From positions 372,001 through 436,000 of the IMG/VR virus record IMGVR_UViG_3300037297_000066: 64,000 bases of DNA. One strand, given 5' to 3'. A model generated the notes under the pieces. That model saw only the letters and a list, made by a program, of their open reading frames with translations. It was not told the origin of the DNA and did no database searches. The position numbers were made by a program, and so were the translations under genes. Of the stretch, positions 6,690-38,069 are shown piece after piece (position 1 is the stretch's first letter; every line of letters begins with the position of its first letter).

Positions 6690-7382
6690 ATGGATCCCAA
6701 ATGGAAGGCTGTTTCCGTCCCTACCAGCAAGACGGCTTGTTCCTGTGACTCTGGAAAAGCTAAATGGCCTTCCAGTTTGGAGGCAGTGTGGCAGAATCCC
6801 ACTGCTTACGACGCTTTGGAGGACGGCCCTTCCTACATGCCCACGAAGACAGCCAGTACAACGGATCGGGCGGCTGTAGCCCGAATGGTTCAGGCCAATA
6901 CGTACGCTGGGCAAAAGTTGGCTGACGAGGTGGGGGGAACCAGGTTAGTATCTCTGCTGACGGTCATGAAGGCTTTGTACCTGATCCACCAGACTCATCA
7001 CTGGAGGACCAACGGGGCGTCCTACTATGCGGACCATTTGTTGTTCCAGCGGATCTACGAAGAGTCTCTGGAGTACATCGATGGGATGGCAGAGCGGGCT
7101 ATAGGGACGTCAAACAACCCTTGGGTGATCTGTCCTATGAAGTTGGCCAAAGGTCAGCTCAATGTCGTACACTTCTTCTGTGAGGGCAATTCTCAACCGA
7201 GCCCTGAGCAAATGGTCAACATCAGCCTCAAAGCGGAGCTGGCTTTCTTGGCTTTTCTGAAGCAGGTTGTAGAGGCTATGAGGCAAGAGGGAAGCTCGAC
7301 GGATGGCGTTGAGGACCTGATTCAGGGAACCGCCAGTAAGCATGAAGAGTTCGTTTACCTGCTGCAGCAGCGGTCCAGGTAA
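6690..7382 (+). CDS. dps: Dps/ferritin-like protein with N-terminal extension
   Basis: HQTHHW...G..YYADHLLFQRIYEE....IDGMAER matches the Dps ferroxidase signature. Confidence 0.75.
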   Translation: MDPKWKAVSVPTSKTACSCDSGKAKWPSSLEAVWQNPTAYDALEDGPSYMPTKTASTTDRAAVARMVQANTYAGQKLADEVGGTRLVSLLTVMKALYLIHQTHHWRTNGASYYADHLLFQRIYEESLEYIDGMAERAIGTSNNPWVICPMKLAKGQLNVVHFFCEGNSQPSPEQMVNISLKAELAFLAFLKQVVEAMRQEGSSTDGVEDLIQGTASKHEEFVYLLQQRSR

Positions 7383-7417
7383 AATCCAAATCCAGAATAC
7401 ATCAGACGAGGATACAG

Positions 7418-8428
7418 ATGAGCAAGAAAGAAGAAGGGCTTACTCTTGGGGTAGGTCTAGACATCGGGACCATGAACCTTGTAGGGGCCCGGGAGGTGGA
7501 AGGCAAGACCGTCTTCACACAGGTACGGGACGCCTTTCTGGACCTTGATCCGGAAGCGAAACGATCTCTCAAGATGTCGGGAGTGAACTTTCTGGAGAGC
7601 AACGGGTCCTTGGTGGTGGTTGGGGACAGTGCCTTGACCATGGCCAACCTTTTCAAGAGGGAGGCTCGTCGTCCTTTGAGTCGAGGGGTGATCTCGGCTG
7701 GGGAACTGGATGCTCAAGAGATCTTGAACGTCTTGTTGCTTGAAGTGGTGGAGCAGGCCCGGGAAGAGGGGGAGCACTGCTTCTACTCAGTTCCTGCGCC
7801 GCCTCTTGATGATCCAGGTCAAGACATCATTTTCCACACTGAGATCTTTCGTAAGATCATCAGGGGGCACAAGTACACGGCGCATCCAGCCAACGAGGCG
7901 ATGGCCATCATCTTCAGCCAGTGCGTTGAGGAGCAGTTCTCGGGTTTGGCGGTGAGTTTCGGGGCCGGGATGTGCAACGTGGCCTTGGCCTACAAGGCTG
8001 CTTCTGGAATGGAATTTTCCTTGGCTCGGGGAGGAGACTGGGTGGATTCTCAGTCGGCCCGAGCGGTGGGCAAGACTGCTAGTCAGATGTGTGCCATCAA
8101 GGAAAAGGGAGTGAACCTGGCTCAACCTCAAGGTAGAGAACAGGAGGCTCTGGCTCTCTACATTCGCTCTTTGATCAACTACTGTCTCCAGAACATCGTT
8201 GCTCAGTTCAAGAAGGTTCGAAACGATGTGTCGTTGCCTGATCCGATCCCCTTTATCGTTTCGGGAGGATCTTCGATGGCCGGCGGGTTCTTGGAGTTGT
8301 TCAAGGATGAGTTCCAGCAGGTCAAAGGGTTCCCCATCGAAATCAGTGAGATTCGAGCAGCCGCCGATCCCATGACAGCCGTGGCCGAGGGGTTGTTGGT
8401 GCTCGCCAAGCAGGAACACGAAGAGTAG
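7418..8428 (+). CDS. Actin-fold ATPase, volactin/salactin-like
   Basis: Phosphate-1 GLDIGTMN, connect NEAMA, phosphate-2 VSFGAGMCN, ARGGDWVD, adenosine VSGGSS, connect-2 DPMTAVAEG. Confidence 0.9.
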   Translation: MSKKEEGLTLGVGLDIGTMNLVGAREVEGKTVFTQVRDAFLDLDPEAKRSLKMSGVNFLESNGSLVVVGDSALTMANLFKREARRPLSRGVISAGELDAQEILNVLLLEVVEQAREEGEHCFYSVPAPPLDDPGQDIIFHTEIFRKIIRGHKYTAHPANEAMAIIFSQCVEEQFSGLAVSFGAGMCNVALAYKAASGMEFSLARGGDWVDSQSARAVGKTASQMCAIKEKGVNLAQPQGREQEALALYIRSLINYCLQNIVAQFKKVRNDVSLPDPIPFIVSGGSSMAGGFLELFKDEFQQVKGFPIEISEIRAAADPMTAVAEGLLVLAKQEHEE

Positions 8429-8429
8429 C

Positions 8430-9605
8430 GTGTACTACTTTCTCACCAACTCCCTTAGGAACCGTTTGATTCTGGAGCTGCAGGATTCGTTTTCGAAGCA
8501 TGCTCTCTACAAAAAGATCGTTCCTAACATCCAGAACAAGTACGCCTTCAAAGAGCGGCCTCAGTTTGGGGTAGTGGTCAAGGGAGCCAGCGGAAACAAA
8601 ATCCAGCTCTCGGCGGACAACTTCATTGGGGAAGTACTGAGCCATGTCATGCTGGCGTATGTGGGGGAACATCAGTTTCCCTTGGAGTGGGTGAGAGAGG
8701 ACCTGAATAGAGTTAGGGCAGCAGGAGGTTTCCCTTCTCCTCCGGGGATCTACTATATCGAGGTTCTTCAGGCTCCAACCAATCCGACAGAGCCTGGGTT
8801 TTTCGCTATCGACCCTCTTTACACGCAGCCTGATGAAGCGGTTCTGGTTTTCCAGTCGGGAATTGAGAAAGAGGCCCAGCTTCAGAACGTACCCGTTCAG
8901 GACACTGTGCGGATCTGGGAGAACAACAAGCGGCTTCTCATCGAGGGAACGGACTACATCGTCAATTATGAGACGGGGGCGGTGGCTGTCTTGCAGTCGT
9001 TCCCTCCTGGGACTACTTGGATTGCTCAATACCGTTATGCTGGGGAGTCCCAAGGTCCTATTCCCTTCTACTGGAACAGGGCGGACTTCGAGAGCATTCC
9101 GGGGGTGGTACTGGCTTTTGGAAAGAGAGCTGTTGAGGGGGATACGGTGGCTGTGGTTGTCTACCAGGATAGGGTAGGCACAGCCAAGGCTTATGGAGGG
9201 CAATTCGAAGCCTCTTTTGATTTGGATGTTATGGCTCGTGATACCGAGCAGGTGGGGGAAATCGCCGACATGATCTTCATGTACCTCATGGCGGAGAAGC
9301 GTCCGATTCTGAGTGAAGAAGGTCTAGAGATCATGGACGTCTCTATGGGGGGTGAGGCTGAAGAAGTGATGGATGAGAGTGGAGACAACTACTCCTATAC
9401 CGTTTCCATGTCGGTACAGATCCAGTCGGTGTGGGAAATTCATATTCCGCAACCTCTCACCATCAGCAGAGCTACTCCTGTGACAGCTGCGGGGGATTCC
9501 GATCCTTCTCAACCTTCAGGACTTGTGGCCAGGGCGGACAAGCTGTTTTTCCAGACCACCCCCATTCTGGCCAACAGAAATCCAGATTACGAACGCATCG
9601 GATGA
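8430..9605 (+). CDS. Putative tail terminator/completion protein with inserted beta domain
   Basis: GTG start; C-terminal SFDLDVMARD...IADMI...YTVSMSVQIQSVW resembles terminator folds; lies just upstream of the sheath. Confidence 0.55.
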   Translation: MYYFLTNSLRNRLILELQDSFSKHALYKKIVPNIQNKYAFKERPQFGVVVKGASGNKIQLSADNFIGEVLSHVMLAYVGEHQFPLEWVREDLNRVRAAGGFPSPPGIYYIEVLQAPTNPTEPGFFAIDPLYTQPDEAVLVFQSGIEKEAQLQNVPVQDTVRIWENNKRLLIEGTDYIVNYETGAVAVLQSFPPGTTWIAQYRYAGESQGPIPFYWNRADFESIPGVVLAFGKRAVEGDTVAVVVYQDRVGTAKAYGGQFEASFDLDVMARDTEQVGEIADMIFMYLMAEKRPILSEEGLEIMDVSMGGEAEEVMDESGDNYSYTVSMSVQIQSVWEIHIPQPLTISRATPVTAAGDSDPSQPSGLVARADKLFFQTTPILANRNPDYERIG

Positions 9606-9608
9606 ACC

Positions 9609-10043
9609 ATGCCCAAGTACACTTTCGAGTGTGATTCCTGCAACGTTAGGTTCACTCGGACTCTCAAAATGGGAGAACACCTGACCTGCGCCTGTCCCAA
9701 GTGCAGAGAGCAGGTTCCTAGGTTTTGGGATGGACAGGGGTTTTCCTTCGATTTTGCCGAGGGAGGGAAGGCCCCGGCAAACAGTGGGGTGACCAAGCAC
9801 GATTATCCGACGGCGGACCAGGCTGTGGGAAGGTCCGCCGACAAACGGTGGGCAGAGTACCGAGAGCGGGAAAAGGTGAAAGAAAAGGTTCGGGAGAGGG
9901 GGGGTTCCAGAGCCTTGAATCGGACAGACTCCCCGGAAATAAACGGAAATCGTAGCTATATCCAGTACACAGCCATAGGAGAAAAGGAGCTCCAGGGACG
10001 TCGGGAAGTGGTGGGTAAGCTTAAGCAGCTAGAGCCTCGATAA
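9609..10043 (+). CDS. FmdB-like zinc-ribbon protein
   Basis: MPKYTFECDSC...F...CPKC signature. Confidence 0.75.
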   Translation: MPKYTFECDSCNVRFTRTLKMGEHLTCACPKCREQVPRFWDGQGFSFDFAEGGKAPANSGVTKHDYPTADQAVGRSADKRWAEYREREKVKEKVRERGGSRALNRTDSPEINGNRSYIQYTAIGEKELQGRREVVGKLKQLEPR

Positions 10044-10085
10044 ACTATCGTTTGACTCTACTAATGTAGAGCGGTTCTGCTGCTC

Positions 10086-10135
10086 AGATTCAGATGTAGA
10101 CGTAGATCAAAAGCCCTAGATCCAGATTAAAATTG
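10086..10135 (+). repeat. 6-nt periodic AGAYNN repeat in the sheath leader
   Basis: AGATTC AGATGT AGACGT AGATCA AAAGCC ct AGATCC AGATTA AAATTG. Confidence 0.7.
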
Positions 10136-10163
10136 GCATTTTTCCTGCGAATAGGAGTGTCCA

Positions 10164-13100
10164 GTGTCTCTAGGACCATTGACGACCTACGTTCCCCCTG
10201 GCATCTACACCCGCACCCTGACCGAGGTCAACGCAGCCAACTTGGTGGCTGGCCTTCGGATCCCCGTTGTCATTGGCGTGGGACAGGAACAGCTGGAGCA
10301 ATCCGACCTGGAAATGGTCAGGGGTAGCTCGGCTACTCTGGACCAGCAAATCGTCAGCGAGGACGTCTCACAGTCTTTCGTGGTGGACAACTCCAATCCT
10401 CTGGTTCCCGTTCTGGGACCCACGGATGGGACCTTCACGACGGTTCGAGTTCGCAACTACCCCATTGTGGATGGACAGGGCTTTGGCCGAGTGACCAACG
10501 ACGTTCGTTCGGTCAGTGCCACGGTCAACGGGACGCCTGTGGCCATCGGAAGTGTGCAGGGTACCAACGGATACATCACCTTCCAGGTACCGCCTCAGGT
10601 GGGGGACGACGTTCGGGTCACCTATTACTTCCACCGAGGAGACACTGCTTTCACGGATACCGTGTCTGACCAGGTGACTCCGACCACAGCGGACCTGACC
10701 ACTCCTGCAGTGGCCAACTTCGCTTTCACGACAGGTATCAGCGACACCTTCGTGATCGGAGTGGATGGTACTGACAGTACCGTTGTCTTTACCGAGGGCA
10801 TTCACACAGCTCTAGCCGTCAAGACCATGATCGACGCCGCTCTGATCACTGGATTGACTACGGCAGTCTTCACGGACAACGAAGGCAATGACCACGTCAC
10901 TCTGACGGCGGCTCAGAAGCTGGTGATTGGTACGGGCAACGCTAATGGAGCTTTGGGCTTCACGGCGGGGGCTTCCACCAGTCGAAACGTCAACTTCCGG
11001 GTGTTCCAGCGTCCTATCGTGGATGGAACGGATGGAGGGATCACCACCACAGACCCAAGCAAGGTTGTGGTGCTAGTGAACAACTCTCAGGTCATTCCCA
11101 CTGCTGTGGATGGCACCAACGGAATCGTGACTTTGCCGATGGCCCCTGCGGCTGGAAGCACCGTCACAATTCAGTACTGGGCCAACACGTGGCAGGACAC
11201 CTTCGACTACTTGCCCAACACGCTGGTTTCGACGGTGACCCGTTGCGGGTTCTCGCCTGGTCGTTCGGACTACATCCAGAACCAGGATTTCGTCATCTCC
11301 AATCCGAGCGAGGATGTCTCGGTGGTCCACTGGGGCTCCAGTGTGGCTGTTTCCTCAGTCCTGAGAACGGCTGGGGCAACCGTCTTCGACGAGACGCAGA
11401 TCCTGGCCTCTTTGGTCGATGACAAGATGTACTTGGCGGAATGCACCCGGGTGGTAGACACCACGGTCGTTCCTGCCGAGACATCTCCCAATGAGTTCCT
11501 GCTCCCGGCTATTCCGACCACAGGCAACGGTCGAGACACGCCGCTTGGGAGCACACTCTACAACACGGTCACCAATGGCCGGATGAACCTGAACACGGAT
11601 CGTCCCGATCTCATCACGGTCTACACTGGTCGAGATCTTCGGGATGCGTTGGGTCGGGATCCCATCGATGTGATCGAAGTGGATGCCCTCAATCGCCAGA
11701 TCACGCTCAAGCAGGCCGTTCCTCCAGATCACAACGCCTACGCCACGTTCTGGTATAGCCGTCTGTCTGACGACACCTACGTGCTGACCAACAAGGTGGC
11801 TGGAGCCGTTGGTACAGGAGAGTACGAGGTATTCAGTTCCGTTCAGAACAACAACCTCTTGCAGGTTCTGTTCGGAAGCAAGACGGCTACCGAAGTCATT
11901 CAGTGGCCTCGGGGAGTGGAGAGTATTCCAGATGCCTTCCACACGGGTACGGGAACTGGGTCTCCAGTGGCCGAGACTGTCACTGTTACCTTCGCTTCTG
12001 AGGCAGCCAAGAATGCTGCTTACACTAACGAAGGGGCCGCTCCCTACGAGTTCTTCGCTGGAACTTCGGATCAGTGGGTGACCGTGCTCAACGGCGTGAC
12101 CTACCCTACGGACCTGGATACAGCCGTGGTTGGTCGAATCGTTGGGACTCGGGTGGCTGTGGATGGTTCCGACCAGATCACCTTCACCACGGGCGTCAAC
12201 GACGTTCTGAACCTGACCATCGACGGTACGGACTACACTGTGACTTTCTCAGCAGGCGCTACTGCTGTGGGGCCAGTGGGAACGCCTGGGACGGTCCTTG
12301 CTCAGATCGCTGCGGTCATTCCGACCACACCTGAACTGGTTCAGTTGGGTCCCTCGGGATCTGATGTGATGTTCATCATCCCCTCGTCTTCGACGCCTGC
12401 GGCTTTGCCTGGTGGCTTCGACCATGTCTCTGCGGTCAGCGTCCGTCAGGGTACTGCCGAGACGACTTTGGGCTTTGTGCCTTTCCAGTCGGCCTCGGGG
12501 ACTCCCACGGCAACCAACAAGCCGGCCACCCTTTTGGGTACGGAGACCGGGGACTTCATCATCACTCTTGGCGTGAACGACGAGTTCAAGTTCCGGGTCG
12601 ATGGATTGGAGTACACAGTCACTCTGACGGCGGGCACTCGTACGGCGACCCAGGTGGTTTCGGACATCACGGGTGTGGTTGCTGGGGTGGCTTCTGTGGG
12701 TACCTTGGCCAACTTGGACAAGGTTCGACTCACCAGTACCACCACCAACTCTGGCTCTAGGATCGTCATTCTCGATGGCTCAGCCAACGATACGCTGGGC
12801 TTCACCGAAGATGATTCGGCGAGCTACACGCCTGTCACGGCTCAGGAAGTGGTCAACGAGCTTCTGGCCACGGCCAGTTTCCAGACCGACGGGGTGGCTT
12901 ACGTTTCCACCATCAATGGAAGCCAGTACGTAACCATTGAGTCCAGTGATGTGGGAGCCACTACCCCATCGGCATCGAGCATCGCTTTCACGTCGGTTTC
13001 CAACTCGGCATTCAACACTACCACGGGTACAGGCATCGAGCCTGGCACCAGTGGAGACAATGGTGAGGACGCTCGGGACATTTACACCGTTGCCACGGAC

Positions 13101-14423
13101 CGAACAGACGGCCTGGGTTCTGGTGGAACCGGTGTTCCGGGGCAGACCTACACGGATGCCAAGACGGGCCTGAGATTCACGGTTCTGGAGTCTGCCACGG
13201 GGTCCTACACTCCTGGAGGCACCTTTACTCTGACTGTCAGCCCGACCTGGAAAGTCCATCCTTCGATTCCAAGCCTGCAGTTGGGCGGTCTCGAAGTCAT
13301 CGTCACGGACACGGTGGGTGTGGGAGTGGACGACACGGCCAATGTTCAGGCGTTCAATCCTGGTGGTAGCGAGCCAGCTGTCGGAGACTTCTACTACATC
13401 AGCTATCAGTACCTGAAGCAGGATTTCTCGACTCGGCTGTTCCAAACCTTCAAGGTCATCGAGGCCAACTTTGGTCGTTTGAGTCCTGAAAACAGGGTCA
13501 CCTTGGCTAGCTTCCTGGCCATTCTGAATGGTGCGGTCCTCGTGGGTATCAAACAGGTGCTCAAGGAGTCCAACACCAACCAGGCCAGTGACGCTTCGTT
13601 CTTGGCGGCCCTTCAGGAGCTGACCATTCCGCTGCCTGGCAACGTCAAGCCGGATGTATTGGTGCCTCTCACGACCTCTACGACGGTCTATGGGGCTCTG
13701 ATGCAGCACTGTGAGGTTCAGTCCAACATTCGCAACCAAGCGGAAAGGATGGGCTTCATTGGGTTCGCTTCGGGAACCTCTCCGATCACAGCCCAAACGA
13801 TTGCCAAGAGCTTGCTCAGCAACCGTATCGTGGCTGTGTACCCGGACTCGGCAGTCATTACTGTGACCAATGAACTGGGTGAGAGCAGCGAATCTCTGGT
13901 TGACGGCACCTTCCTGGCTTCAGCTTTGGCTGGTGCGATCGTCAGCCCGGCTGTGGACGTGGCGACTCCGTACACGAGGCGACAACTTGTCGGAATCGAC
14001 CGGCTTCCTCGGGTTTTGGACCCGGTGGAGGCAAGCCAGACAGCAGTGGCTGGTATCACGGTCCTGGAGGATCTCGCAACAACTGTTCGAGTCAAGCAGG
14101 GTCTGACCACGGACATGTCCACGATTCTGACTCGCCTTCCCACGGTGACTCAGATTGCGGACTTCGTGCAGCAACAGTCCCGAGCTACCTTGGATGCCTT
14201 CGTGGGCACCAAGTTCCTCAGCCAAAGGACGAACGAAGTCGAAGTCTCGATGACTTCTCTGTTCAACCAGATGTTGCAGGCAGAGATTGTTGGAGGCTTC
14301 ACGGGAATCAACGCAGAGGTGGATCCCAACGATCCGACCATCATGCGGTTCGAGGCGTTCTACGCTCCGATCTTCCCGCTTTTGTACATCGTCCTCACAT
14401 TCAACCTAAGAGCTAACGTCTAG
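10164..14423 (+). CDS. Contractile tail sheath protein with large multi-domain insertions
   Basis: N-terminal YVPPGIY; C-terminal sheath core (ERMGFIG...GITVLE...GLTTD...IADFV...FVGTKF...YAPIFPLLYIVLTF). GTG start. Confidence 0.9.
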   Translation: MSLGPLTTYVPPGIYTRTLTEVNAANLVAGLRIPVVIGVGQEQLEQSDLEMVRGSSATLDQQIVSEDVSQSFVVDNSNPLVPVLGPTDGTFTTVRVRNYPIVDGQGFGRVTNDVRSVSATVNGTPVAIGSVQGTNGYITFQVPPQVGDDVRVTYYFHRGDTAFTDTVSDQVTPTTADLTTPAVANFAFTTGISDTFVIGVDGTDSTVVFTEGIHTALAVKTMIDAALITGLTTAVFTDNEGNDHVTLTAAQKLVIGTGNANGALGFTAGASTSRNVNFRVFQRPIVDGTDGGITTTDPSKVVVLVNNSQVIPTAVDGTNGIVTLPMAPAAGSTVTIQYWANTWQDTFDYLPNTLVSTVTRCGFSPGRSDYIQNQDFVISNPSEDVSVVHWGSSVAVSSVLRTAGATVFDETQILASLVDDKMYLAECTRVVDTTVVPAETSPNEFLLPAIPTTGNGRDTPLGSTLYNTVTNGRMNLNTDRPDLITVYTGRDLRDALGRDPIDVIEVDALNRQITLKQAVPPDHNAYATFWYSRLSDDTYVLTNKVAGAVGTGEYEVFSSVQNNNLLQVLFGSKTATEVIQWPRGVESIPDAFHTGTGTGSPVAETVTVTFASEAAKNAAYTNEGAAPYEFFAGTSDQWVTVLNGVTYPTDLDTAVVGRIVGTRVAVDGSDQITFTTGVNDVLNLTIDGTDYTVTFSAGATAVGPVGTPGTVLAQIAAVIPTTPELVQLGPSGSDVMFIIPSSSTPAALPGGFDHVSAVSVRQGTAETTLGFVPFQSASGTPTATNKPATLLGTETGDFIITLGVNDEFKFRVDGLEYTVTLTAGTRTATQVVSDITGVVAGVASVGTLANLDKVRLTSTTTNSGSRIVILDGSANDTLGFTEDDSASYTPVTAQEVVNELLATASFQTDGVAYVSTINGSQYVTIESSDVGATTPSASSIAFTSVSNSAFNTTTGTGIEPGTSGDNGEDARDIYTVATDRTDGLGSGGTGVPGQTYTDAKTGLRFTVLESATGSYTPGGTFTLTVSPTWKVHPSIPSLQLGGLEVIVTDTVGVGVDDTANVQAFNPGGSEPAVGDFYYISYQYLKQDFSTRLFQTFKVIEANFGRLSPENRVTLASFLAILNGAVLVGIKQVLKESNTNQASDASFLAALQELTIPLPGNVKPDVLVPLTTSTTVYGALMQHCEVQSNIRNQAERMGFIGFASGTSPITAQTIAKSLLSNRIVAVYPDSAVITVTNELGESSESLVDGTFLASALAGAIVSPAVDVATPYTRRQLVGIDRLPRVLDPVEASQTAVAGITVLEDLATTVRVKQGLTTDMSTILTRLPTVTQIADFVQQQSRATLDAFVGTKFLSQRTNEVEVSMTSLFNQMLQAEIVGGFTGINAEVDPNDPTIMRFEAFYAPIFPLLYIVLTFNLRANV

Positions 14424-14431
14424 TTCGAAGG

Positions 14432-14465
14432 ACGGGGTGCCAAGGGATAGCCTTTGGCACCCTGT
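14432..14465 (+). terminator. Strong hairpin after the sheath (terminator or mRNA-stability element)
   Basis: ACGGGGTGCCAAGGG-ATAG-CCTTTGGCACCCTGT, about 15 bp including G-U pairs, with no U-tract. Confidence 0.5.
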
Positions 14466-14595
14466 GAGGGTTCCTTCCTAGGGGTCTGTAAATCCTGTCT
14501 TTTTTGGCAGGAGCATTCGCAGGCTAGGGCTCATGTGCTATACATGAACCTCGTAGGTCTATGCCGTTTTGGTGTAATGATCTTATCACCTAGGT

Positions 14596-19014: not shown

Positions 19015-19016
19015 AC

Positions 19017-19961: not shown

Positions 19962-19970
19962 ACTGAGGGT

Positions 19971-20831: not shown

Positions 20832-21878
20832 ATGCCTGCACGAGTTTTAGTCACCCTCGGAACGGATGGGATCACCAACTGGGTTCAGGCCCCGAACGGT
20901 CGAAAACTGAGTTTGGGGACCATTGCTCCTGTCAAGTTCGTAGTGGAATTGGCTTCCAACGCTAGGGCGGCTCGGCAGGCTCTGGATGGCTTTGTTCGGG
21001 ATGGGGAGGGGATGCTGAGTGTGGATCTTCAGGGGATGTTGGATTTGCTCACACCTAGACGCACTCGATGGGCCACGGATGCTTTTATTCCCTCTGATCT
21101 ACAACAGATGGAGAAGTCTAGCCTGGACCTACAGTGGGTCGATTTGTTCCTCTCAAAGGCAGAGGGACAGGTGCAGAAGTTGTCTTCGGAACCCGGAGAC
21201 CCTTCTGAACTGGAGACCCTCAACAAGTCTGTCCAGGCTCTTTGCCATCCAGAGCAGGTTTCCTTTGAGGGAAGGCTGACTGCCATCGAAGCGTGTCTTG
21301 AGAAGGTTCCTTTGTCGGAGGAGAGGGTAGCTACCTTGAGATATTTGGTAGCGAGTCTTCAAACTCCTAAGGCCGCCGTTGAGTTGGCCGAAAGCATTCT
21401 AGCTGAGGTTCGAGAGACGAATGCTCGGATTGATTCCCTGGTCGAGCAAGGAAAGCGTTTCAGTTCGGTCAAAGCCAAAACTGAACTGGCCAAGGTGGTC
21501 AATGCTGTGGCCGGCATTGCTACTCATGATGTGACGGTTCCAGAAGTTCGAGAGGAGCTGAATGCAACGGCCTGTCGAGCAGACGAGTTGCACCGTCTCT
21601 TTTTCAGCAAGAGTGCAGCTCTTCGTCCGGGAGCAGCCACTCAACTTGAGTCAGCTCTCAACAAACTCCTCCGAAAGTTCCGTGGTGTGAAGGTGTCCTT
21701 GGATTTTCGTACCCGAGGCAAGAAGCAGGAGCCTTACATCACAGTTGCTATGCCGAGCCGAGATTGGTTTGAGAACACCTTGGCTCGTGACTTGGACGCT
21801 TTGGGGGACTTCAATTCTCTAGTTGGCTCCTATGGGGCTGAGTACAAGCTGACCGGACAAGAGATCATCATCCAATGA
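20832..21878 (+). CDS. Hypothetical helical protein, candidate head-internal protein
   Basis: 348 aa; contains RWAT, RVAT and KSAA motifs. Confidence 0.55.
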   Translation: MPARVLVTLGTDGITNWVQAPNGRKLSLGTIAPVKFVVELASNARAARQALDGFVRDGEGMLSVDLQGMLDLLTPRRTRWATDAFIPSDLQQMEKSSLDLQWVDLFLSKAEGQVQKLSSEPGDPSELETLNKSVQALCHPEQVSFEGRLTAIEACLEKVPLSEERVATLRYLVASLQTPKAAVELAESILAEVRETNARIDSLVEQGKRFSSVKAKTELAKVVNAVAGIATHDVTVPEVREELNATACRADELHRLFFSKSAALRPGAATQLESALNKLLRKFRGVKVSLDFRTRGKKQEPYITVAMPSRDWFENTLARDLDALGDFNSLVGSYGAEYKLTGQEIIIQ

Positions 21879-21907
21879 GGATTTGAACCCGCCAGGGAGG
21901 ACCTACC

Positions 21908-22630
21908 GTGCCTACTGCAACCAATTCCAACAGCAACGCAAACTACATCTACCGGATGGGCACGAGCCCCAACACCCGAGCGGCCGTTTCACAAAAAAAC
22001 AAGGTCTACGGGTACATGGAGGGAGCCCAACGGTTTCAGCAGATCGGTGTTCTTTCTGAGTTCGGGCATGATGAGTCTCGGGCCATCGAGCCTATCCGTG
22101 GGGTAGGTTATGGTGATCAGGTTGCCGAGCTCATTCCGGGTGTAACGGAGCCAATGACCTTGACGGTCAACAAGACTCTGCTGTACGCCGTGAACATCTT
22201 CCAGGCACTCGGCTACAAGGGTGGGGTTCGAGGGCTGGTTCGAAGCCTCAAGCACCACCGGTGGCCGTTCGACATCCGTCAAGAACTGGTTTTCAGTGAG
22301 ATCGCTTCGGCTTGGGATACCTCTGAGTATCAAGAGAAAGCTTTGACTCAGGCAGGGGCTGTTCCGACACCTGCGTCTGTGATCAAGGCTCTGTTCACCT
22401 TCTACGAGGGTTGCTGGATGAACAGCTACTCGGCTTCCTACACATCGGATGCCTCGATCGTAGCGGAGAACTCCAGCGTCACCGTGACCGACGTTCTTGA
22501 TGGCAAGAGCACCTATGGTGAGTACATCGACAGCGGTCTGGCTCCAGTGTCTGAGAATGGTTCGGCAGGTGTTGGCTACTCCATCCGGTTCTCTGGAGGA
22601 GGCGCCGCGACACCGGCTCCTGCCGTCTAG
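21908..22630 (+). CDS. Tail tube protein
   Basis: IG.LSEF...ESRAIEPIRGVG...ELIPG...PFDI...YEGCW..SYS..Y...IVAEN is a myovirus tube pattern; GGAGG Shine-Dalgarno, GTG start. Confidence 0.8.
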   Translation: MPTATNSNSNANYIYRMGTSPNTRAAVSQKNKVYGYMEGAQRFQQIGVLSEFGHDESRAIEPIRGVGYGDQVAELIPGVTEPMTLTVNKTLLYAVNIFQALGYKGGVRGLVRSLKHHRWPFDIRQELVFSEIASAWDTSEYQEKALTQAGAVPTPASVIKALFTFYEGCWMNSYSASYTSDASIVAENSSVTVTDVLDGKSTYGEYIDSGLAPVSENGSAGVGYSIRFSGGGAATPAPAV

Positions 22631-22731
22631 TACGGTTGGACGACGATGAAGATGAGAATGCAGCAAGTACAATTGCGCCCTAGGCAGATGTAGACTTCCG
22701 CCTTCATCGCCGTCCTCAGATAAAGAAGAGG

Positions 22732-23880
22732 ATGAGGATGGCAACACTCAAGGCGACAAAGCTCCAAGCAGCTATACGCAAGGCAAAGAAGGTTGGTCTG
22801 GTTGAGGAGTTCGTAACCATTACGGGCTGCCCGATAACGCTGACCAACCTTCAGCCTGAGCAGTTTGAGCAGATCGTAGATGAATGCGAAGAACTGGAGG
22901 ATGTGGCCTACTACCACGCCTACCAGATCGGGCACATTTCTCGCAGTCTGGTTGAGGTCAACGGGATCGACCTAAGAGATGTTGACTTCGTAGAAGTTGA
23001 GGTCCAAGAGCCTGATGATTCGGGGCAGTTGGTACCCAAGACGGTCCAGATCGAGCGTCACGAATGGGTCAAGAAAGAGATCCTTTCGACATGGGGGAGA
23101 GAAGCCCTTGCTATAGCTTGGCGCAAGTTCATGGATGTCCTCCACAAGGCCGAGTTAGCGTCTAAGGAGGGGGTTACTTTCGACCTGGCGCAAGAAACTC
23201 CAGAGGAGAAGTATCGCCGTCTGTTGGACGAGGCCAGGGAAATTGAGGAGAACCTGCCTCCGGATCTGGTTCCACGCATTCTGGAGGAGAAAGGCTACCT
23301 GCTCAAGGCTTCTAAAGAGGAGTTGGAAGCCGCTGGAGAGAGGATAGATCGCCTAGCTCAGGAGCAAGAGGAGAGCTCCCCTTCTTCGGAACCTCCACCA
23401 CCCTCTCCTGAGCCTCCAGTACCCCCTCCAGTACCCCCTCCAGTGGCTTTGGCGTCTCCTACTCAGGGTTCCCCTCAGGAGGTTCCAAAACAGCCTCTAG
23501 ACGCTCCTGAGGGCCCTAGTCAGGACGTTAAGCAGAGAATGTCTAGTCGGACTCCTTTGAATCGCCAAGGAGTGCAGGCTCCGATACCGGTTCAGAGGCG
23601 TGTGGTTTCGGCTCAACAGTCAGTTCCGGTGCCCCCCAATATTGCAGCCGCTGCTATGAGTGCGTCGGACAAGGCGGAGATAGAGAGGAAGGCGTTAGAG
23701 GAGTTGGACCCTAGTTTAGCTCAGGCAGATCCTTCTCAGTCTGCCAAACGACCTTCTGCGGGGGAGATTGCGGAACTTCGAAAACAAGGGACTTTGGATG
23801 CTCGGGCTCTCGTAGGCATCACGGACACCCCTCCTCCTGCTGGGATAAACCCTAGGTACCGAAAGCCGCCTGGACTGTGA
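22732..23880 (+). CDS. Tail assembly chaperone-like protein with Pro-rich tail
   Basis: Between tube and tape measure; ITLTNL...SLVEVNG pattern; start may be 22738. Confidence 0.55.
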   Translation: MRMATLKATKLQAAIRKAKKVGLVEEFVTITGCPITLTNLQPEQFEQIVDECEELEDVAYYHAYQIGHISRSLVEVNGIDLRDVDFVEVEVQEPDDSGQLVPKTVQIERHEWVKKEILSTWGREALAIAWRKFMDVLHKAELASKEGVTFDLAQETPEEKYRRLLDEAREIEENLPPDLVPRILEEKGYLLKASKEELEAAGERIDRLAQEQEESSPSSEPPPPSPEPPVPPPVPPPVALASPTQGSPQEVPKQPLDAPEGPSQDVKQRMSSRTPLNRQGVQAPIPVQRRVVSAQQSVPVPPNIAAAAMSASDKAEIERKALEELDPSLAQADPSQSAKRPSAGEIAELRKQGTLDARALVGITDTPPPAGINPRYRKPPGL

Positions 23881-25141: not shown

Positions 25142-25143
25142 TT

Positions 25144-28845: not shown

Positions 28846-28848
28846 TAG

Positions 28849-29574
28849 ATGGTTCGCATTCCGTCTCCCAACGATATGACTCCCTTCGCTCCGGCGGGCG
28901 GAGAAGTTCCGTCTGCGGATACGGGATACGTACACCCTGCTGAAATCCGTCGGGGACTCATCCCGATGGCTTTCCAAATCACGAGTCCCTTTGACCGGAG
29001 ACGAGTACTGCTCCCTCATGCGTTGGTGCTTCATGTCAACCCTTTGAGCATTCAAGAGTCCTATGTTCAAAAGGTAGAGCGCTTTCAGACCCGAGGTGGT
29101 TGGCAAGAGCAACATTGGGGTTCGGATTTGTCCGAGATCAGTGCTGACTCTACCACCGGGGCTTTCATGAACATCTACACGGGGCTCACCTCAGTGCTTC
29201 GGCAGCGGACGATAGCTTGGGACCGGTATCGAGATCTTGTAGAGCTGTTCTACAACAACGGCAGTGTTTACGATCCTTTCGGCAACATTGTGCTGCAGGG
29301 AGGGGTGATGCTCATCTACGATCGGGGGACCTACATGGGAACCTTCCGGTCCTTAGAGACTCAAGAAACAGATGACGCGCCTTTTTCCTTCAAGGTCAAT
29401 TGGAGCTTCAAGGTAGAGGAGACTATCTTGCTTGTTCCCTCTACCATGAGGAGCCCTAACATCCGACTTCCGACGTTTCAGAATCAGAACACTTTACCTG
29501 CTTCGAACGGCTCAACGGTCACCGGGTCCGCCCGAGCATTGACGGCTGAGGAAGCCAATGAATTTGGAGTGTGA
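28849..29574 (+). CDS. Baseplate tube-initiator-like protein
   Basis: LHVNP.SI...QTRGGW..QHWG...ISAD...YMGTFRSL..ETDDAPFSFKVNWSFKVE. Confidence 0.65.
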   Translation: MVRIPSPNDMTPFAPAGGEVPSADTGYVHPAEIRRGLIPMAFQITSPFDRRRVLLPHALVLHVNPLSIQESYVQKVERFQTRGGWQEQHWGSDLSEISADSTTGAFMNIYTGLTSVLRQRTIAWDRYRDLVELFYNNGSVYDPFGNIVLQGGVMLIYDRGTYMGTFRSLETQETDDAPFSFKVNWSFKVEETILLVPSTMRSPNIRLPTFQNQNTLPASNGSTVTGSARALTAEEANEFGV

Positions 29575-31544: not shown

Positions 31545-31547
31545 GCA

Positions 31548-35270: not shown

Positions 35271-35272
35271 TC

Positions 35273-37465
35273 ATGCCTGTAAACCGCACTGTTCCCAGAA
35301 GGCCCATAGGCACTGTTCCAAAGAAAGACTTTGCTGACGGTCCTCAGAACTTCATTGGTACCAAGATTGGTCTGATCACCCGAGTGGATGAGATCAACAT
35401 GAAGGCCGATGTGAAGATTCTGACAGGTGCAGGTTTTCGCTATGAGCTGGATCTGACCCAATCGATGGCGGGCCCTCGTAGTTTCTGGGGCGGGATCCCT
35501 GAAGTCAATTCTTTGGTCATCTTGGGGTATCGTCGAGTCCACAAGAACCTTCAAGAGGCTGTAATTCTCACCTACCTGCCGACAGGTACCAAGAGCGGTC
35601 TTCGTTTCGATCCCTTCTCTCAGTACGATCCGAACAACGTTGACCCCGACGAACTAGAACTGGTTGAGCAACTCTTGGGGAAGGCCGTCAGGTACAAGCG
35701 ACTCATGATGAAGCCGGGGGACGTGGGAGGCATGTCCTCGTCGGGGTCAGAGCTGGTGCTGTCCAAGGACGTGTCCTTCTGCAACCGAGCCGGAGATTTC
35801 GTTGAGCTAAGGGATTCAGAACGAACTTTAGTAGCACAGTCGGTCCACAGGATTGAAGCAGAGTCAGGTGTCCGCAGAGTCTCTGGGCCTATCCGTCGTA
35901 GTGCTTTCTACTTACCCGAAGACATCTTCGATGCTGATGGGAAGCTCAAGAGCGCTAGTGCAACGGCAGTCAAAGATCGCTACTACGGGCAGGATGAGCT
36001 GGAGAAGATGGGCCCTGGGCTACAGGCTGGGGAGCCCCCCAAGTACGCCAACTCTGACGGAACGGTTTCTGAGATCTTCAACGACTTCACCAACTATCCC
36101 CCCACTACCTATTCAAACGGCCGAAAGGTTCACTACGTCCCCACCTCTCCAGGGCAAGGGATAGACGACATTGGCGCAACGGCTGATGCCTTTGTGGAAC
36201 ATCGAATGGAGATGAGTCAGACCTCTGACTTGTCTCAGGAGGTCCTCGAAGAGATAGATGGGTTCCGTTTGGATCAACGGCTTCCCTACATCGAGCAAGT
36301 TCTGGGTACCGTGGTGGGCAACGACATGCTCACCTCTTTGGGGATGCGTCAGTACGCCGACATTCTCAAACCACGTATCTTTGACGAGTTCAACAGCATC
36401 CAGAGGGGTCGGTTCCGTTTGGAACGGTGCTTAAGGTCTCCTACCAATGATCTCGAAGCCTATACGAAGGCCGGGGCTTACCTGTTCCGGCTTCGAATTC
36501 CTCGGGGTCGTGGGACAGAGTACTTTGCAGCGGCGGTATCGAAGCAAGGAAAGCTCTTCCTCAACGTTCCGGCCCCAGCCACTGAGGACTATGCCTCGGG
36601 GGTGAAGAACGTCTCGGCCGAGATCAACATGGGAGGGGCTCTCAAGGCTCATTTTGGGGCAGCCCGTCCTGATGGTGTTTCCATTCACGCCACTATGGAT
36701 GGGGGCATCAAAGCAGTTATTGGACATGACTCCAGGGGCCGAGCTCTAGACATAACCTATCGGTCTTCTGTCAAGAGCACTTACGAGGCCAATAACCCTG
36801 ACGACAACGGGGTAGCCTACGAGATGCTTTGCAAAGGGGCTCGCCGTACGAACGTCACAGGGACCGACCAAGACTTCGTGGGAGCTCGTCAGTCGGTAGT
36901 AGATGGTGGGGACAAGCTTCAGTGTGATCGTAGAATGGTCAATGCCCATTCCGGTTACACTCTCAATGCGGGAGAGATGAACACTCTCATCGCCGGCAAG
37001 TCTCAGTACAACTACGCCCTTCAGGTATTGGAGAACATCATTGCGGGGGGCCGGATCTCGACCATCTTGGCGGGTGGCTTGGTTCAAAACGTGGCCGCCG
37101 GAGGGATGTCCTACAACGTTGGGGCCGGGGGCATCACGATGACGGTTCAGGCTGGAGGCATCGTGGGGAATGTCACGGCTGGAGGGGTGTCTTTTACTAC
37201 CGCTGCTGGAGCTGTGAATCTTGCAACTGCCAGTGGGGCGGTGTCTATTGGAGCAGGGGCAGGGGCCATCTCTTTGACGGCTAGCTTGGCTCTCAACTTG
37301 ACTGGAGCTCTTATCGTGGCCTCGGCTGCCCAGGTGAAGCTCGGGGCTCCTATCGCCGTTCTAGGAGTCTGCAGAGGTACTCCTACGATGCCCCCAAACA
37401 TGCCTACACTGGATCCAATCACGAACATCCCTCTCCAAGGTAGCGTGCAAGTCTGGTCCACCTGA
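35273..37465 (+). CDS. Central spike (gp5/gpV-like): OB fold plus beta-helix
   Basis: IGLITRVD...GIPEVNSLVILGY OB fold; C-terminal 9-aa Gly-rich repeats (NVAAGGMSY/NVGAGGITM/TVQAGGIVG). Confidence 0.8.
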   Translation: MPVNRTVPRRPIGTVPKKDFADGPQNFIGTKIGLITRVDEINMKADVKILTGAGFRYELDLTQSMAGPRSFWGGIPEVNSLVILGYRRVHKNLQEAVILTYLPTGTKSGLRFDPFSQYDPNNVDPDELELVEQLLGKAVRYKRLMMKPGDVGGMSSSGSELVLSKDVSFCNRAGDFVELRDSERTLVAQSVHRIEAESGVRRVSGPIRRSAFYLPEDIFDADGKLKSASATAVKDRYYGQDELEKMGPGLQAGEPPKYANSDGTVSEIFNDFTNYPPTTYSNGRKVHYVPTSPGQGIDDIGATADAFVEHRMEMSQTSDLSQEVLEEIDGFRLDQRLPYIEQVLGTVVGNDMLTSLGMRQYADILKPRIFDEFNSIQRGRFRLERCLRSPTNDLEAYTKAGAYLFRLRIPRGRGTEYFAAAVSKQGKLFLNVPAPATEDYASGVKNVSAEINMGGALKAHFGAARPDGVSIHATMDGGIKAVIGHDSRGRALDITYRSSVKSTYEANNPDDNGVAYEMLCKGARRTNVTGTDQDFVGARQSVVDGGDKLQCDRRMVNAHSGYTLNAGEMNTLIAGKSQYNYALQVLENIIAGGRISTILAGGLVQNVAAGGMSYNVGAGGITMTVQAGGIVGNVTAGGVSFTTAAGAVNLATASGAVSIGAGAGAISLTASLALNLTGALIVASAAQVKLGAPIAVLGVCRGTPTMPPNMPTLDPITNIPLQGSVQVWST

Positions 37466-38028
37466 TGCCTGCTACGATTCCGGGTGTGGTAGGGGTACTG
37501 GTACCCAACATCCTCTTTACGGGGGTGGGCGTGATCAAGTATTCCAAAGGTGTAGCCAACGGGCTGACTGCTTGGTCTAGGGCTATTCAGATCTCAACTA
37601 CGGACGCAGGTACAGTAGGCGTAGGTAAGGGGGCTCCAATACCGCTCATTGTTCCTCAACCCATTCTGTTTGGAAACATCCTGGCAGGGATGAAAGCCTA
37701 TGACTTGATAGGCTTGTTGGCGGTGCCTTTTGTACTTGGCCTATCGACTGGTCTGAGTCTGGCGTTTGCTCAGATGCTAATCAACACGACACATCCGTCG
37801 GTAGGTTCCGGGACGGCCATAGCGAAGTTCAGCGCTCCCCCAGCCTCTTCTTTCATGATCAGCGGTTTTGCCCGAGAAAACATGACCGGAGAAGGATCCG
37901 TCCGGAAGGCCAGAGCTTTGTCACAAGGTCTGGACAGATCCATCGCGAGTCTTGTTATCCCCGTCCCCATTGTAGGGCCTGCCGCCTCAGCCCCCTCTTC
38001 GGGGTCGGGTTCTGGCAAGCTCATATGA
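37465..38028 (+). CDS. Small hydrophobic Gly-rich protein, candidate spike tip or adaptor
   Basis: Coupled (TGATG) to the spike gene. Confidence 0.45.
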   Translation: MPATIPGVVGVLVPNILFTGVGVIKYSKGVANGLTAWSRAIQISTTDAGTVGVGKGAPIPLIVPQPILFGNILAGMKAYDLIGLLAVPFVLGLSTGLSLAFAQMLINTTHPSVGSGTAIAKFSAPPASSFMISGFARENMTGEGSVRKARALSQGLDRSIASLVIPVPIVGPAASAPSSGSGSGKLI

Positions 38029-38069
38029 GGATGAAAATGCAAACGTCGATTCGTTCCCAGGAGTAACCC

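What the first reader, a model, noticed from the sequence alone, without database searches (positions are those of the whole stretch)
7382..38052. Dispersed 6-nt-periodic RRAYNN repeat in the leaders of actin, sheath, tube, chaperone and baseplate genes
Seen in five intergenic gaps. 7382: AAATCC AAATCC AGAATA, then 7404 AGACGA GGATAC AGATGA. 10086: AGATTC AGATGT AGACGT AGATCA, then AGATCC AGATTA AAATTG. 21873: CAATGA GGATTT GAACCC. 22638: GGACGA CGATGA AGATGA GAATGC, then 22686 AGATGT AGACTT and 22718 AGATAA AGAAGA GGATGA GGATGG. 38023: ATATGA GGATGA AAATGC AAACGT CGATTC. All are on the sense strand, next to or overlapping the ribosome-binding site. Inference: an operator for an oligomeric RNA-binding regulator (TRAP/HutP-style periodic recognition) that coordinates tail-part stoichiometry, or DNA iterons for a partition-like adaptor. 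I do not recognise it as a described element.
Basis: partly seen in the sequence, partly recalled or inferred. Interest (0 to 1): 0.8.

Follow-up and report, generated by a model that had tools for sequence, protein, structure and literature searches.

The report
Periodic RRAY repeats in phage leaders
A clade of huge (300-500 kb) environmental phages carries conserved sense-strand arrays of a 4-base core (RRAY, mostly AGAT) repeated every 5-6 bases just upstream of, or across, the start sites of its capsid-operon, tail-sheath, actin and a few other late genes; this is most likely an undescribed RNA operator for a still unidentified multi-site RNA-binding regulator.

Summary
The repeat is real. 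All quoted strings are at the stated coordinates. Four of the five gaps (7382, 10086, 22638-22741, 38023) carry arrays that recur at the orthologous leaders of dozens of related huge-phage contigs. The fifth gap (21873) is not supported.

The unit is RRAY plus 1-2 variable bases, so the period is 5 or 6, not strictly 6. Two more arrays lie outside the window: upstream of the major-capsid operon (genome 352003) and upstream of a DUF5659 gene (genome 370967).

- In relatives the RRAY-RRAY spacing excess is large: g22732 leader z 20 (lag 5) and 27 (lag 6), actin leader z 8 and 9. A motif-free autocorrelation of sheath leaders gives z 10 at lag 6.
- Coding and other intergenic controls show no excess.
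- All 67 strong hits in 71 relatives are on the sense strand. Two more distant relatives have none.
- The arrays often run in register into the Shine-Dalgarno sequence and the AUG (RRAUG). In one leader they sit inside a conserved long-range RNA helix.

My best reading (about 0.5) is a single-stranded RNA operator read by an oligomeric or cooperative RNA-binding factor, working like TRAP but not a TRAP-family member. No trans factor was identified. A DNA operator and a factor-independent leader element remain open. No match in Rfam or in the literature searched.

The parts
7382..7421 (+). Actin-leader array: AAATCC AAATCC AGAATA, a 4-nt gap, then AGACGA GGATAC AGATGA. The last three units cover the SD (GAGGA) and the ATG at 7418.
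   Evidence: (top chain score in the 437-kb genome, 29.8 against a shuffled-genome maximum of 20.5). Conserved at the orthologous leader in relatives.
10056..10071 (+). Small hairpin CTCTAC-TAAT-GTAGAG between the Zn-ribbon gene stop and the sheath-leader array. Relatives have a comparable hairpin or a GTAGA box here.
   Evidence: Read. Function not tested.
10086..10109 (+). Sheath-leader cluster 1: AGATTC AGATGT AGACGT AGATCA.
   Evidence: the only 4-unit strict RRAY chain in any leader of the genome. The same cluster architecture is seen in the large majority of 52 distinct relatives.
10110..10117 (+). Linker AAAGCCCT between the two clusters, conserved in the closer relatives.
10118..10135 (+). 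Sheath-leader cluster 2: AGATCC AGATTA AAATTG. It ends 17 nt before the SD (AGGAG, 10153-10157) and 28 nt before the GTG at 10164.
22638..22661 (+). g22732-leader array 1: GGACGA CGATGA AGATGA GAATGC. Bases 22638-22651 also form the 5' arm of a long-range helix.
   Evidence: P=0.015; relatives z=20-27.
22686..22697 (+). g22732-leader array 2: AGATGT AGACTT. It lies within the 11-mer CAGATGTAGAC, which this leader shares only with the sheath leader.
22702..22715 (+). 3' arm (CTTCATCGCCGTCC) of the long-range helix that encloses arrays 1-2.
   Evidence: own duplex -25 kcal/mol, z=-2.5; z<-2 in 19 of 36 relatives, with different arm sequences; self duplex -32.2 against non-self -24.9 kcal/mol; the own partner ranks in the top 3 in 14 of 36.
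22718..22741 (+). g22732-leader array 3: AGATAA AGAAGA GGATGA GGATGG. It covers the SD and the two in-frame ATGs at 22732 and 22738.
   Evidence: RRAUG start in 11 of 13 distinct relatives.
38023..38052 (+). g38070-leader array: ATATGA GGATGA AAATGC AAACGT CGATTC. It begins on the stop codon of gene 37465-38028 and also reads as a 13-codon linker ORF (38025-38066).
   Evidence: P=0.001; 2-4 units ending in RGAUG in at least 10 of 36 relatives; z=5.3 and 4.1.
21873..21890 (+). Claimed site CAATGA GGATTT GAACCC upstream of gene 21908-22630. Not supported as a member of the class.
   Evidence: P=0.12; relatives z=3.1 at lag 5, 0.0 at lag 6. Only about 7 of 45 relatives show a short array here.

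Best explanation
The arrays are cis-acting elements in the 5' leaders of a set of late genes in one clade of huge phages: the capsid operon, a DUF5659 gene, the actin gene, the tail sheath, g22732 and g38070. Each array presents 2-9 copies of a 4-nt core, RRAY (mostly AGAU), spaced 5-6 nt apart on the mRNA. I propose that a homo-oligomeric or cooperatively binding single-strand RNA-binding factor reads one core per subunit.

Where the array runs in register into the SD and the AUG (actin, g22732, g38070, and some sheath genes), binding would directly control 30S access. That would give translational repression or timing control. Where the array lies 20-60 nt upstream (sheath, capsid operon), it would nucleate binding or remodel the flanking hairpins.

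Shown: the existence, periodicity, strand, conservation and position of the arrays, and the enclosing RNA helix. Inferred: that the ligand is RNA rather than DNA, that a protein binds, and the direction of the effect.
For: - Core conserved, spacers free. The unit profile is A/G, G/A, A, T/C, followed by two variable bases (C 52-54%).
- Independent recurrence. The element is the top-scoring hit at the same orthologous leaders in whole-genome scans of G000, G001, G003 and G004. It also recurs in 71 actin loci, 50 g21908 loci and 40 g38070 loci and in the capsid-operon leader of 4 genomes.
- Sense strand only: 67 of 67 strong hits, none antisense.
- Mixed 5- and 6-nt spacing within arrays.
- Register with the start codon. 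RRAUG starts are 11/14 for actin and 11/13 for g22732, against 22% of all ATG genes in the genome. Canonical SD cores are retained (sheath 45/46, actin 11/14), which is what a regulated rather than an SD-less leader would look like.
- In the g22732 leader the arrays are enclosed by a long-range helix. Its arms change between relatives but stay complementary, so this region functions as RNA.
- Whole-genome scans of the two more distant relatives (Tunturi_5 and LR745208) find nothing above shuffles. The element is therefore a clade-specific acquisition, consistent with a clade-specific trans factor.
Against: - No binding factor was identified. There are no TRAP, HutP, Hfq or CsrA families in the phage genome.
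- The one suggestive candidate, DUF5659, has its own array-bearing leader and is a single copy in 9 of 9 array-bearing genomes. But it shares that phyletic profile with 76 other ORFs. Its AF2 model (pLDDT 91) has no informative fold match. Unrelated DUF5659 genes have no arrays.
- Predicted RNA accessibility of the arrays is not higher than that of base-shuffled arrays (0.485 against 0.52).
- No transcript data: no RNA run was listed. Transcription start sites are unknown, so a DNA-level role cannot be excluded.
- The relatives are phylogenetically related, so the z-scores overstate the number of independent events.
Confidence: 0.5

Rival explanations
1. Factor-independent or host-read leader element. 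The arrays act directly on the mRNA as a translational enhancer or ribosome standby site (for example read by ribosomal protein S1 or cold-shock-type OB folds), or as an mRNA stability or processing signal. This would boost or time expression of very abundant late proteins, with no dedicated phage regulator.
For: - The arrays precede genes expected to be highly expressed: the sheath, the capsid operon and the actin gene.
- They are G-poor and slightly less paired than the rest of the leader (0.485 against 0.441, P=0.002).
- They are flanked by hairpins.
- The analogous TAACTGA repeats were proposed to bind S1, Csp or CsrA.
- No phage-encoded RNA-binding family was found.
Against: - A merely unstructured spacer would not keep a 4-nt core at 5-6-nt spacing across six leaders and more than 50 genomes.
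- Strong SDs are already present.
- The probable tube gene, which should be as abundant as the sheath, mostly lacks arrays.
- The more distant relatives express the same genes without arrays.
Confidence: 0.2
2. DNA-level element. The arrays are operators or iterons on double-stranded DNA for a phage transcription factor (activator or repressor of late promoters). Alternatively they are centromere-like sites for an adaptor that couples DNA to the phage actin.
For: - Tandem direct repeats next to an actin gene recall the parC/ParR/ParM arrangement. Arrays flank the actin-p391-Zn-ribbon block.
- Some arrays contain TGTAGA, which resembles the -10-like TGTAG of the genome's abundant early-promoter motif.
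- In the capsid-operon leader a conserved ACCCCAG box follows the array at a distance that would suit a promoter and start site.
- Transcription start sites are unknown.
Against: - The 5/6-nt mixed spacing is incompatible with phased binding on B-DNA.
- Orientation is always sense.
- Arrays overlap the SD and the AUG in register.
- Arrays lie inside a covarying RNA helix.
- TGTAG is absent from most sheath arrays.
- Arrays occur 27 kb from the actin gene, and LR745208 keeps the actin gene with no arrays.
- No ParR-like or other DNA-binding domain was found in p391 or the Zn-ribbon protein by Pfam.
Confidence: 0.17
3. Slippage-generated simple-sequence repeats. These would either have no specific function or act as length-variable (phase-variable) expression tuners, as with the AGAT tract upstream of Moraxella uspA2.
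For: - Some neighbouring units are exact duplicates: AAATCC AAATCC in the window, and AGACCC three times in G003.
- Unit number differs between relatives.
- An AGAT tetranucleotide tract upstream of uspA2 is known to modulate expression.
Against: - The units are imperfect, with a conserved core and free spacers. That is the signature of selection on the core rather than of recent slippage.
- The arrays persist at orthologous sites across proteins only 45-70% identical.
- The 98-100% identical contigs show no length change in the g22732 leader (L167 and L168 identical).
Confidence: 0.06
4. Coding artefact. The 'gaps' are really coding sequence: mini-ORFs, frameshifted gene ends, or a recoded stop. 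The period would then reflect dipeptide repeats.
For: - Units of the AGATGA/AGATGT type create short ORFs. Examples are AUG-AAG-AUG-UAG in the capsid-operon leader and a 13-codon ORF at 38025-38066.
- G001 and G004 have a real 80-100-aa ORF starting at the 38023-type array.
Against: - The most common units (AGATCC, AGACCC, AAATCC) contain no start codon.
- 5-nt units break any reading frame.
- All three frames of the sheath leader are closed (read).
- Coding controls show period 3 in base identity but no RRAY spacing excess.
Confidence: 0.03

Closest known systems
[quoted passage not shown]
   Same: A short core is repeated with 2-3 variable spacer bases (period 5-6) on the sense strand of 5' leaders, and some sites overlap the SD and start codon. 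[quoted passage not shown] That TRAP sites at other genes overlap the start region is my own knowledge.
   Different: - The core here is 4 nt, RRAY (AGAU), not (G/U)AG.
- There are 2-9 units, often in two or more clusters.
- No TrpBP-family protein is encoded by the phage.
- The setting is late genes of a phage, not amino-acid metabolism.
TAACTGA heptamer direct repeats of Beggiatoaceae, Cyanobacteria and Bacteroidetes
   Same: Dispersed sets of 2-6 short direct repeats, mostly within a few nucleotides upstream of start codons. [quoted passage not shown]
   Different: - Those are exact 7-nt units; here the unit is a degenerate 4-nt core plus 1-2 spacer bases.
- In the BOGUAY genome canonical RBSs are rare in repeat-bearing gaps; here the SD is retained.
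- There are 169 sets per bacterial genome; here there are about 6-8 leaders in a phage, at orthologous positions.
HutP binding sites (Bacillus hut operon)
   Same: A ring-shaped RNA-binding protein reads spaced triplets in a leader (own knowledge).
   Different: - HutP reads UAG triplets with 4-nt spacers in two sets of three.
- There is no HutP family in the phage.
- UAG is not conserved in the units here (CCAGAU dominates).
parC centromere of type II (ParM/ParR) partition systems
   Same: Clusters of tandem direct repeats lie immediately upstream of an actin-like gene (own knowledge of R1 parC).
   Different: - parC iterons are about 10-20 bp and act on dsDNA. Here the units are 5-6 nt with mixed spacing, on the sense strand only.
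- The arrays are dispersed over 58 kb and sit in front of capsid and sheath genes.
- No ParR-like protein was found.
- The actin gene persists without arrays in LR745208.
AGAT tetranucleotide tract upstream of Moraxella catarrhalis uspA2
   Same: The same AGAT core is repeated upstream of an ORF, and its length modulates expression (PMC7302503).
   Different: That tract is a perfect period-4 microsatellite of 12-19 copies acting by phase variation. Here the units are imperfect, period 5-6, 2-9 copies, and conserved across distant relatives.

Membership tests
TRAP regulon (TrpBP-type RNA operator) | A TrpBP-family protein is available to bind | tested here: not met
   PF02081 search of the whole phage genome found no match at E<=0.1, and the control hit B. 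subtilis. The host genome is unknown and could not be tested.
TRAP regulon (TrpBP-type RNA operator) | 9-11 (G/U)AG triplets separated by 2-3 nt | tested here: not met
   The core is RRAY, with A/G at position 1 and C or T after the invariant A. The common unit CCAGAT has CAG/AGA, not GAG/UAG, and there are 2-9 units.
TRAP regulon (TrpBP-type RNA operator) | Sites in the 5' leader on the sense strand, some overlapping the SD or start | tested here: met
HutP-type operator | HutP protein, and two sets of three UAG spaced by 4 nt | tested here: not met
   No PF09021 match. The spacing peak is at 5-6, not 7, and UAG is not conserved.
CsrA/RsmA or Hfq sites | CsrA or Hfq protein, with GGA-in-loop or (ARN)n motifs | tested here: not met
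   No PF02599 or PF17209 match in the phage. The units lack a GGA core, and only every second triplet fits ARN. Host proteins are not testable.
TAACTGA heptamer repeats | Exact TAACTGA units in direct repeat | tested here: not met
   The unit here is RRAY plus 1-2 nt. For the family definition.
ParMRC-type centromere (parC) | Iterons of about 10 bp or more on dsDNA, adjacent to the actin operon only, with a ParR adaptor gene | tested here: not met
   The units are 5-6 nt. Arrays also lie at the capsid operon, g22732 and g38070. Pfam finds no ParR or RHH domain in the neighbouring genes. Binding itself is not testable here.
Phase-variable simple-sequence repeat | Perfect repeats with copy-number polymorphism among near-identical genomes | tested here: not met
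   The units are imperfect. The 98-100% identical contigs L167 and L168 have identical g22732 leaders. Only two near-identical contigs were available, so the test is weak.
Known Rfam cis-regulatory RNA | A match to a curated covariance model | tested here: not met
   cmscan of window 7300-10250 at E<=1 returned only a sub-threshold chance hit inside the actin ORF. The g22732 and g38070 leaders were not scanned.

The most novel reading that the evidence does not exclude
The arrays are the operator of a new, phage-encoded family of ring- or filament-forming RNA-binding proteins. The protein would be one of the 18 or so small clade-specific proteins, which include DUF5659, the Zn-ribbon protein and the products of 5589 and 6103. 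It would read one RRAY core per subunit every 5-6 nt. Through this it would run a dedicated post-transcriptional programme for the capsid, sheath and a phage actin cytoskeleton in 300-500-kb phages.
Probability: 0.3. Interest if true: 0.8.

Novelty: new variant of a known kind. Interest (0 to 1): 0.66.

Why it matters
Almost nothing is known about gene regulation in the uncultured huge phages. This is a compact cis-element that can be scored by computer. It marks a small conserved regulon (capsid operon, sheath, actin and a few others) across dozens of genomes from wetland, soil and sediment.

If a protein reads it, that protein would be a new example of periodic single-strand RNA recognition, a mechanism so far known from only a few systems such as TRAP, HutP, Hfq and Rho. 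It would also provide a handle on how a phage-encoded actin is co-regulated with virion assembly.

The element is short and modular. Reporter and binding tests in E. coli are therefore feasible even though the host is uncultured.

Tried and rejected
- **Genome-wide period-6 signal in all intergenic DNA:** absent. The element is not a general property of leaders.
- **The shared 11-mer CAGATGTAGAC, or TGTAGA, as the essential late-promoter core:** TGTAG is part of an abundant early-promoter-like motif but is missing from most sheath arrays in relatives. Rejected as the defining feature.
- **Dam/GATC sites as the conserved core:** common unit types such as AGACCC, AAATCC and AGATGT lack GATC. Rejected.
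- **Pairing to the 16S 3' tail (GAUC/GGAUC):** only 4-5 nt could pair, and the common variants break it. Rejected by inspection; the host rRNA is unknown.
- **RNA accessibility test:** arrays are slightly less paired than the flanks but not less than base-shuffled arrays. Uninformative.
- **DUF5659 as the binding protein.** Co-occurrence is 9 of 9 in array-bearing genomes and 0 of 6 in array-less ones. However:
  - G010 has the gene with no arrays seen.
  - 76 other ORFs share the same profile.
  - The confident AF2 model has no fold match (Foldseek E>0.3, VIA Z<=4.3).
  - There is no PDB sequence match.
  - Unrelated DUF5659 genes have no arrays.
  - It is kept only as one candidate among 18.
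- **Transcript evidence:** DNA runs only (wetland and marine-sediment metagenomes); no RNA run was listed.
- **Pfam and PHROGs on the alleged tube, chaperone and baseplate genes:** no hits. Gene 21908 matches 'virion structural protein' of Tunturi_5 and Bacillus phage G. Gene 22732 has no match in the phage collection.
- **My initial dismissal of the 22638 and 38023 sites:** I first read them as an unrelated purine tract and a stop-start overlap. I reversed this after 40-50 relatives showed extensive arrays there.
Full report
**Context**

The window is bases 372001-436000 of a 437,331-bp single-contig virus genome with direct terminal repeats. GC content is about 54% and all genes in the window are on the + strand.

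Gene identities checked:
- Gene 7418-8428 is a Volactin-family actin (5e-69).
- Gene 10164-14423 (1419 aa) matches, over its N-terminal 550 aa, the annotated tail sheath of the Acidobacteria phage Tunturi_5 at 33% identity.
- Gene 9609-10043 carries a Zn-ribbon domain, and gene 6690-7382 is Dps/ferritin-like.
- The major capsid protein gene lies 19 kb upstream of the window (genome 352702-353580, PF05065).

DNA of this phage is found in wetland and marine-sediment metagenomes. No RNA run was listed.

All quoted strings are at the quoted coordinates.

Within the window's 16 intergenic gaps, RRAY followed by RRAY 6 nt later occurs 11 times against 1.5 expected (0 of 500 dinucleotide shuffles). 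Periods 4, 5 and 7-11 show nothing. Across all oriented intergenic regions of the genome there is no such excess (32 observed, 28.3 expected). So this is not a general leader property.

I built a unit weight matrix from relatives only and chained it with 5- or 6-nt steps. Exactly three places in the 437-kb genome, on either strand, score above five shuffled genomes (maximum 20.5):
- the actin leader (29.8);
- a site 1 kb before the window, at genome 370967 (28.6);
- the sheath leader (27.4).

Local shuffles give P<0.0005 for 7382 and 10086, 0.001 for 38023, 0.015 for 22631-22731 and 0.12 for 21873. With a strict, spacer-agnostic count, 12 leaders in the genome have at least 3 chained units against 4.2 expected. 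Six of these lie in the 352-410-kb late block.

**Conservation**

This is the strongest evidence. The actin gene retrieved 80 related loci from IMG/VR, mostly from 200-500-kb contigs. The gene order Dps-like, actin, p391, Zn-ribbon, sheath is conserved in about 65 of them.

*Sheath leader.*
- In the large majority of 52 distinct sheath leaders, the otherwise unalignable gap contains sense-strand runs such as AGATCC AGACCC AGATCC. They usually form two clusters separated by a short linker, 20-60 nt before a strong SD.
- With the own genome excluded, AGAY-AGAY distances peak at 6 (53 pairs) and 12 (29), with minor peaks at 5 and 11. For RRAY the counts are 89 at lag 5 and 140 at lag 6.
- A motif-free base-identity autocorrelation gives z=10.0 at lag 6, 6.3 at lag 12 and 3.9 at lag 5. 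The genome's other 160 gaps give z=0.7 at lag 6.

*Scan of the 71 distinct actin loci (587 kb, both strands).* This yields 45 strong hits in sheath leaders, 18 in or straddling actin leaders, 2 in Zn-ribbon leaders, 2 elsewhere on the sense strand and none on the antisense strand. The sheath hits are partly circular, because the matrix came from those leaders. The others are independent.

*Whole-genome scans of three relatives* put the same orthologous leaders on top:
- G001: sheath 33.0, actin 29.9, DUF5659-gene leader 26.2, Zn-ribbon leader 24.6.
- G004: sheath 30.1.
- G003: DUF5659-gene leader 35.6.

*The other three claimed sites.* I first thought these were different things. I then retrieved 50 loci around gene 21908 and 40 around gene 38070.
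- The gap upstream of the g22732 homologue is packed with arrays in most relatives, often three or four clusters. RRAY pair z-scores are 20.1 (lag 5) and 26.6 (lag 6).
- The g38070 leader carries 2-4 units ending in RGAUG in at least 10 of 36 relatives (z=5.3 and 4.1).
- The actin leader gives z=8.3 and 9.1.
- The g21908 leader (the 21873 site) gives 3.1 and 0.0. This site is not supported.
- Coding and other upstream controls are near zero.

*Additional sites.* The leader of the two-gene capsid operon has a conserved three-unit array followed by an ACCCCAG box in all four genomes examined.

*Distribution.* Two more distant relatives have the same sheath and structural genes (LR745208 also has the actin gene). 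Neither has anything above shuffles anywhere in its genome. The element is therefore specific to one clade.

**Anatomy**

- *Unit.* Position 1 is A (81%) or G. Position 2 is G (68%) or A. Position 3 is A. Position 4 is T (71%) or C. These are followed by one or two weakly constrained bases, with C at about 53%. GA and GT spacers are common in the g22732, g38070 and capsid-operon leaders.
- *Array size.* Arrays have 2-9 units in one to four clusters.
- *Relation to the start site.* Arrays are not SD substitutes. SD cores are present in 45 of 46 sheath leaders and 11 of 14 actin leaders. Many arrays end in register on the start codon, so that AU of AUG is the AY of the last unit. RRAUG starts are 11/14 for actin, 11/13 for g22732 and 17/48 for the sheath. 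This compares with 11-20% for the two array-poor neighbouring genes and 22% genome-wide.
- *Flanking structure.* Arrays are typically flanked by small hairpins.
- *Enclosing helix.* In the g22732 leader, a long-range helix (window 22638-22651 with 22702-22715) closes around the arrays.
  - The predicted 5'/3' duplex is -25 to -47 kcal/mol in most relatives, with z<-2 in 19 of 36.
  - The arm sequences differ between relatives.
  - A leader's own 3' segment pairs better than other genomes' segments (-32.2 against -24.9 kcal/mol) and ranks in the top 3 in 14 of 36.

**Mechanism**

Four features point to recognition on single-stranded RNA:
- strict sense orientation;
- tolerance of 5- or 6-nt spacing within one array;
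- purine/purine/A/pyrimidine degeneracy of the core;
- register with the SD and AUG, and embedding in a covarying RNA helix.

The factor would have many equivalent binding pockets or would bind cooperatively. In working principle this resembles TRAP, which reads 11 (G/U)AG repeats. I put about 0.5 on this.

What is shown is the cis anatomy. RNA as the ligand, a protein partner and the sign of the effect are inferred.

The phage encodes no TRAP, HutP, Hfq or CsrA homologue. Rfam has nothing.

DUF5659 looked attractive. It has its own array-bearing leader and is a single copy in 9 of 9 array-bearing genomes. It is absent from six array-less ones, and some homologues carry 2-12 tandem domains. 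However, 76 other ORFs share its phyletic profile. Its confident model (pLDDT 91) has no informative structural neighbour. Unrelated DUF5659 genes lack arrays. It remains one candidate among 18 small clade-specific proteins.

**Rivals**

- *Host-read or factor-independent leader element* (0.2). This fits the high-expression targets. It does not explain the conserved core, the retained strong SDs or the array-poor tube gene.
- *DNA operator, promoter-associated repeat or centromere-like iteron* (0.17). This cannot be excluded without transcription start sites. TGTAGA-containing units resemble the -10-like part of an abundant early-promoter motif. But the mixed spacing, the strand bias, the AUG register, the RNA helix, the 58-kb dispersion and the array-less but actin-bearing LR745208 all argue against it.
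- *Neutral or phase-variable microsatellites* (0.06) and *coding artefacts* (0.03). These fit poorly.

**Comparison with known systems**

It works like TRAP or HutP operators, but it fails their membership tests on both the core motif and the protein. The closest descriptive analogue is the dispersed TAACTGA heptamer repeats upstream of start codons in Beggiatoaceae and Cyanobacteria, which are also only hypothesised to bind a post-transcriptional regulator. Those are exact 7-mers in SD-poor gaps. The AGAT tract of Moraxella uspA2 shares the core but is a perfect period-4 phase-variable microsatellite.

I found no description of this element. I rate it a new variant of a known kind.

**Caveats**

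- Gene calls came from a home-made ORF scorer.
- Relatives are not phylogenetically independent, so the z-scores overstate independent support.
For that reason the decisive tests were run on other genomes.
- Host and transcripts are unknown.

Noticed in passing
Outside the window: genome 65-230 kb, for example 65401, 140409, 198264, 199836, 200363, 207516, 214418: About 20 intergenic gaps carry a bipartite motif, GGGTTAAGATC - 13 nt - (C/G)GTGTAGT(A/G)G, ending about 12 nt before the start codon. It looks like an early-promoter class giving leaderless or near-leaderless mRNAs.
   Followed up: partly
window 14596-19014: The UvrD-like helicase (1472 aa) is interrupted by an intein (Pfam Intein_splicing, aa 617-945).
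   Followed up: no
window 22638-22651 with 22702-22715; relatives L167-L216: A long-range helix in the g22732 leader is conserved, with changed but complementary arms in many relatives. It may be a structured leader RNA in its own right.
   Followed up: partly
window 38025-38066: A 13-codon ORF overlaps the stop of gene 37465-38028 (ATGA) and ends 3 nt before the GTG of gene 38070. It may act as a translational coupling linker. Relatives G001 and G004 have an 80-100-aa ORF at this position.
   Followed up: partly
window 10090-10100 and 22684-22694; genome 352012-352020: CAGATGTAGAC occurs only twice in the genome, both times inside arrays. AGATGTAGA (which contains an AUG-UAG start-stop) is shared by three array-bearing leaders and recurs in relatives.
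   Followed up: partly
L006, L037, L061, L027, L041 (between the Zn-ribbon gene and the sheath leader): Five relatives carry 500-900-nt ORF-bearing insertions just upstream of the sheath array. They may be mobile homing-endonuclease-type genes. The array stays with the sheath gene.
   Followed up: no
window 6690-10043 and L003-L082: A Volactin-like actin gene is conserved in more than 60 huge-phage contigs, in the fixed order Dps-like, actin, 391-aa protein, Zn-ribbon protein, directly before a very large (1419-aa) tail sheath gene.
   Followed up: partly
P0010-P0012, P0137, P0052 (homologues of the DUF5659 protein, genome 371028-371291): The DUF5659 domain occurs as 2, 4 and up to 12 tandem copies in some proteins. 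The single-domain AF2 model (beta-alpha-beta-beta-alpha-alpha, pLDDT 91) has no clear PDB neighbour.
   Followed up: partly
Outside the window: genome about 277.6-279.7 kb: Sequences that look like a tRNA gene cluster appeared in the intergenic listing. They were not scanned.
   Followed up: no
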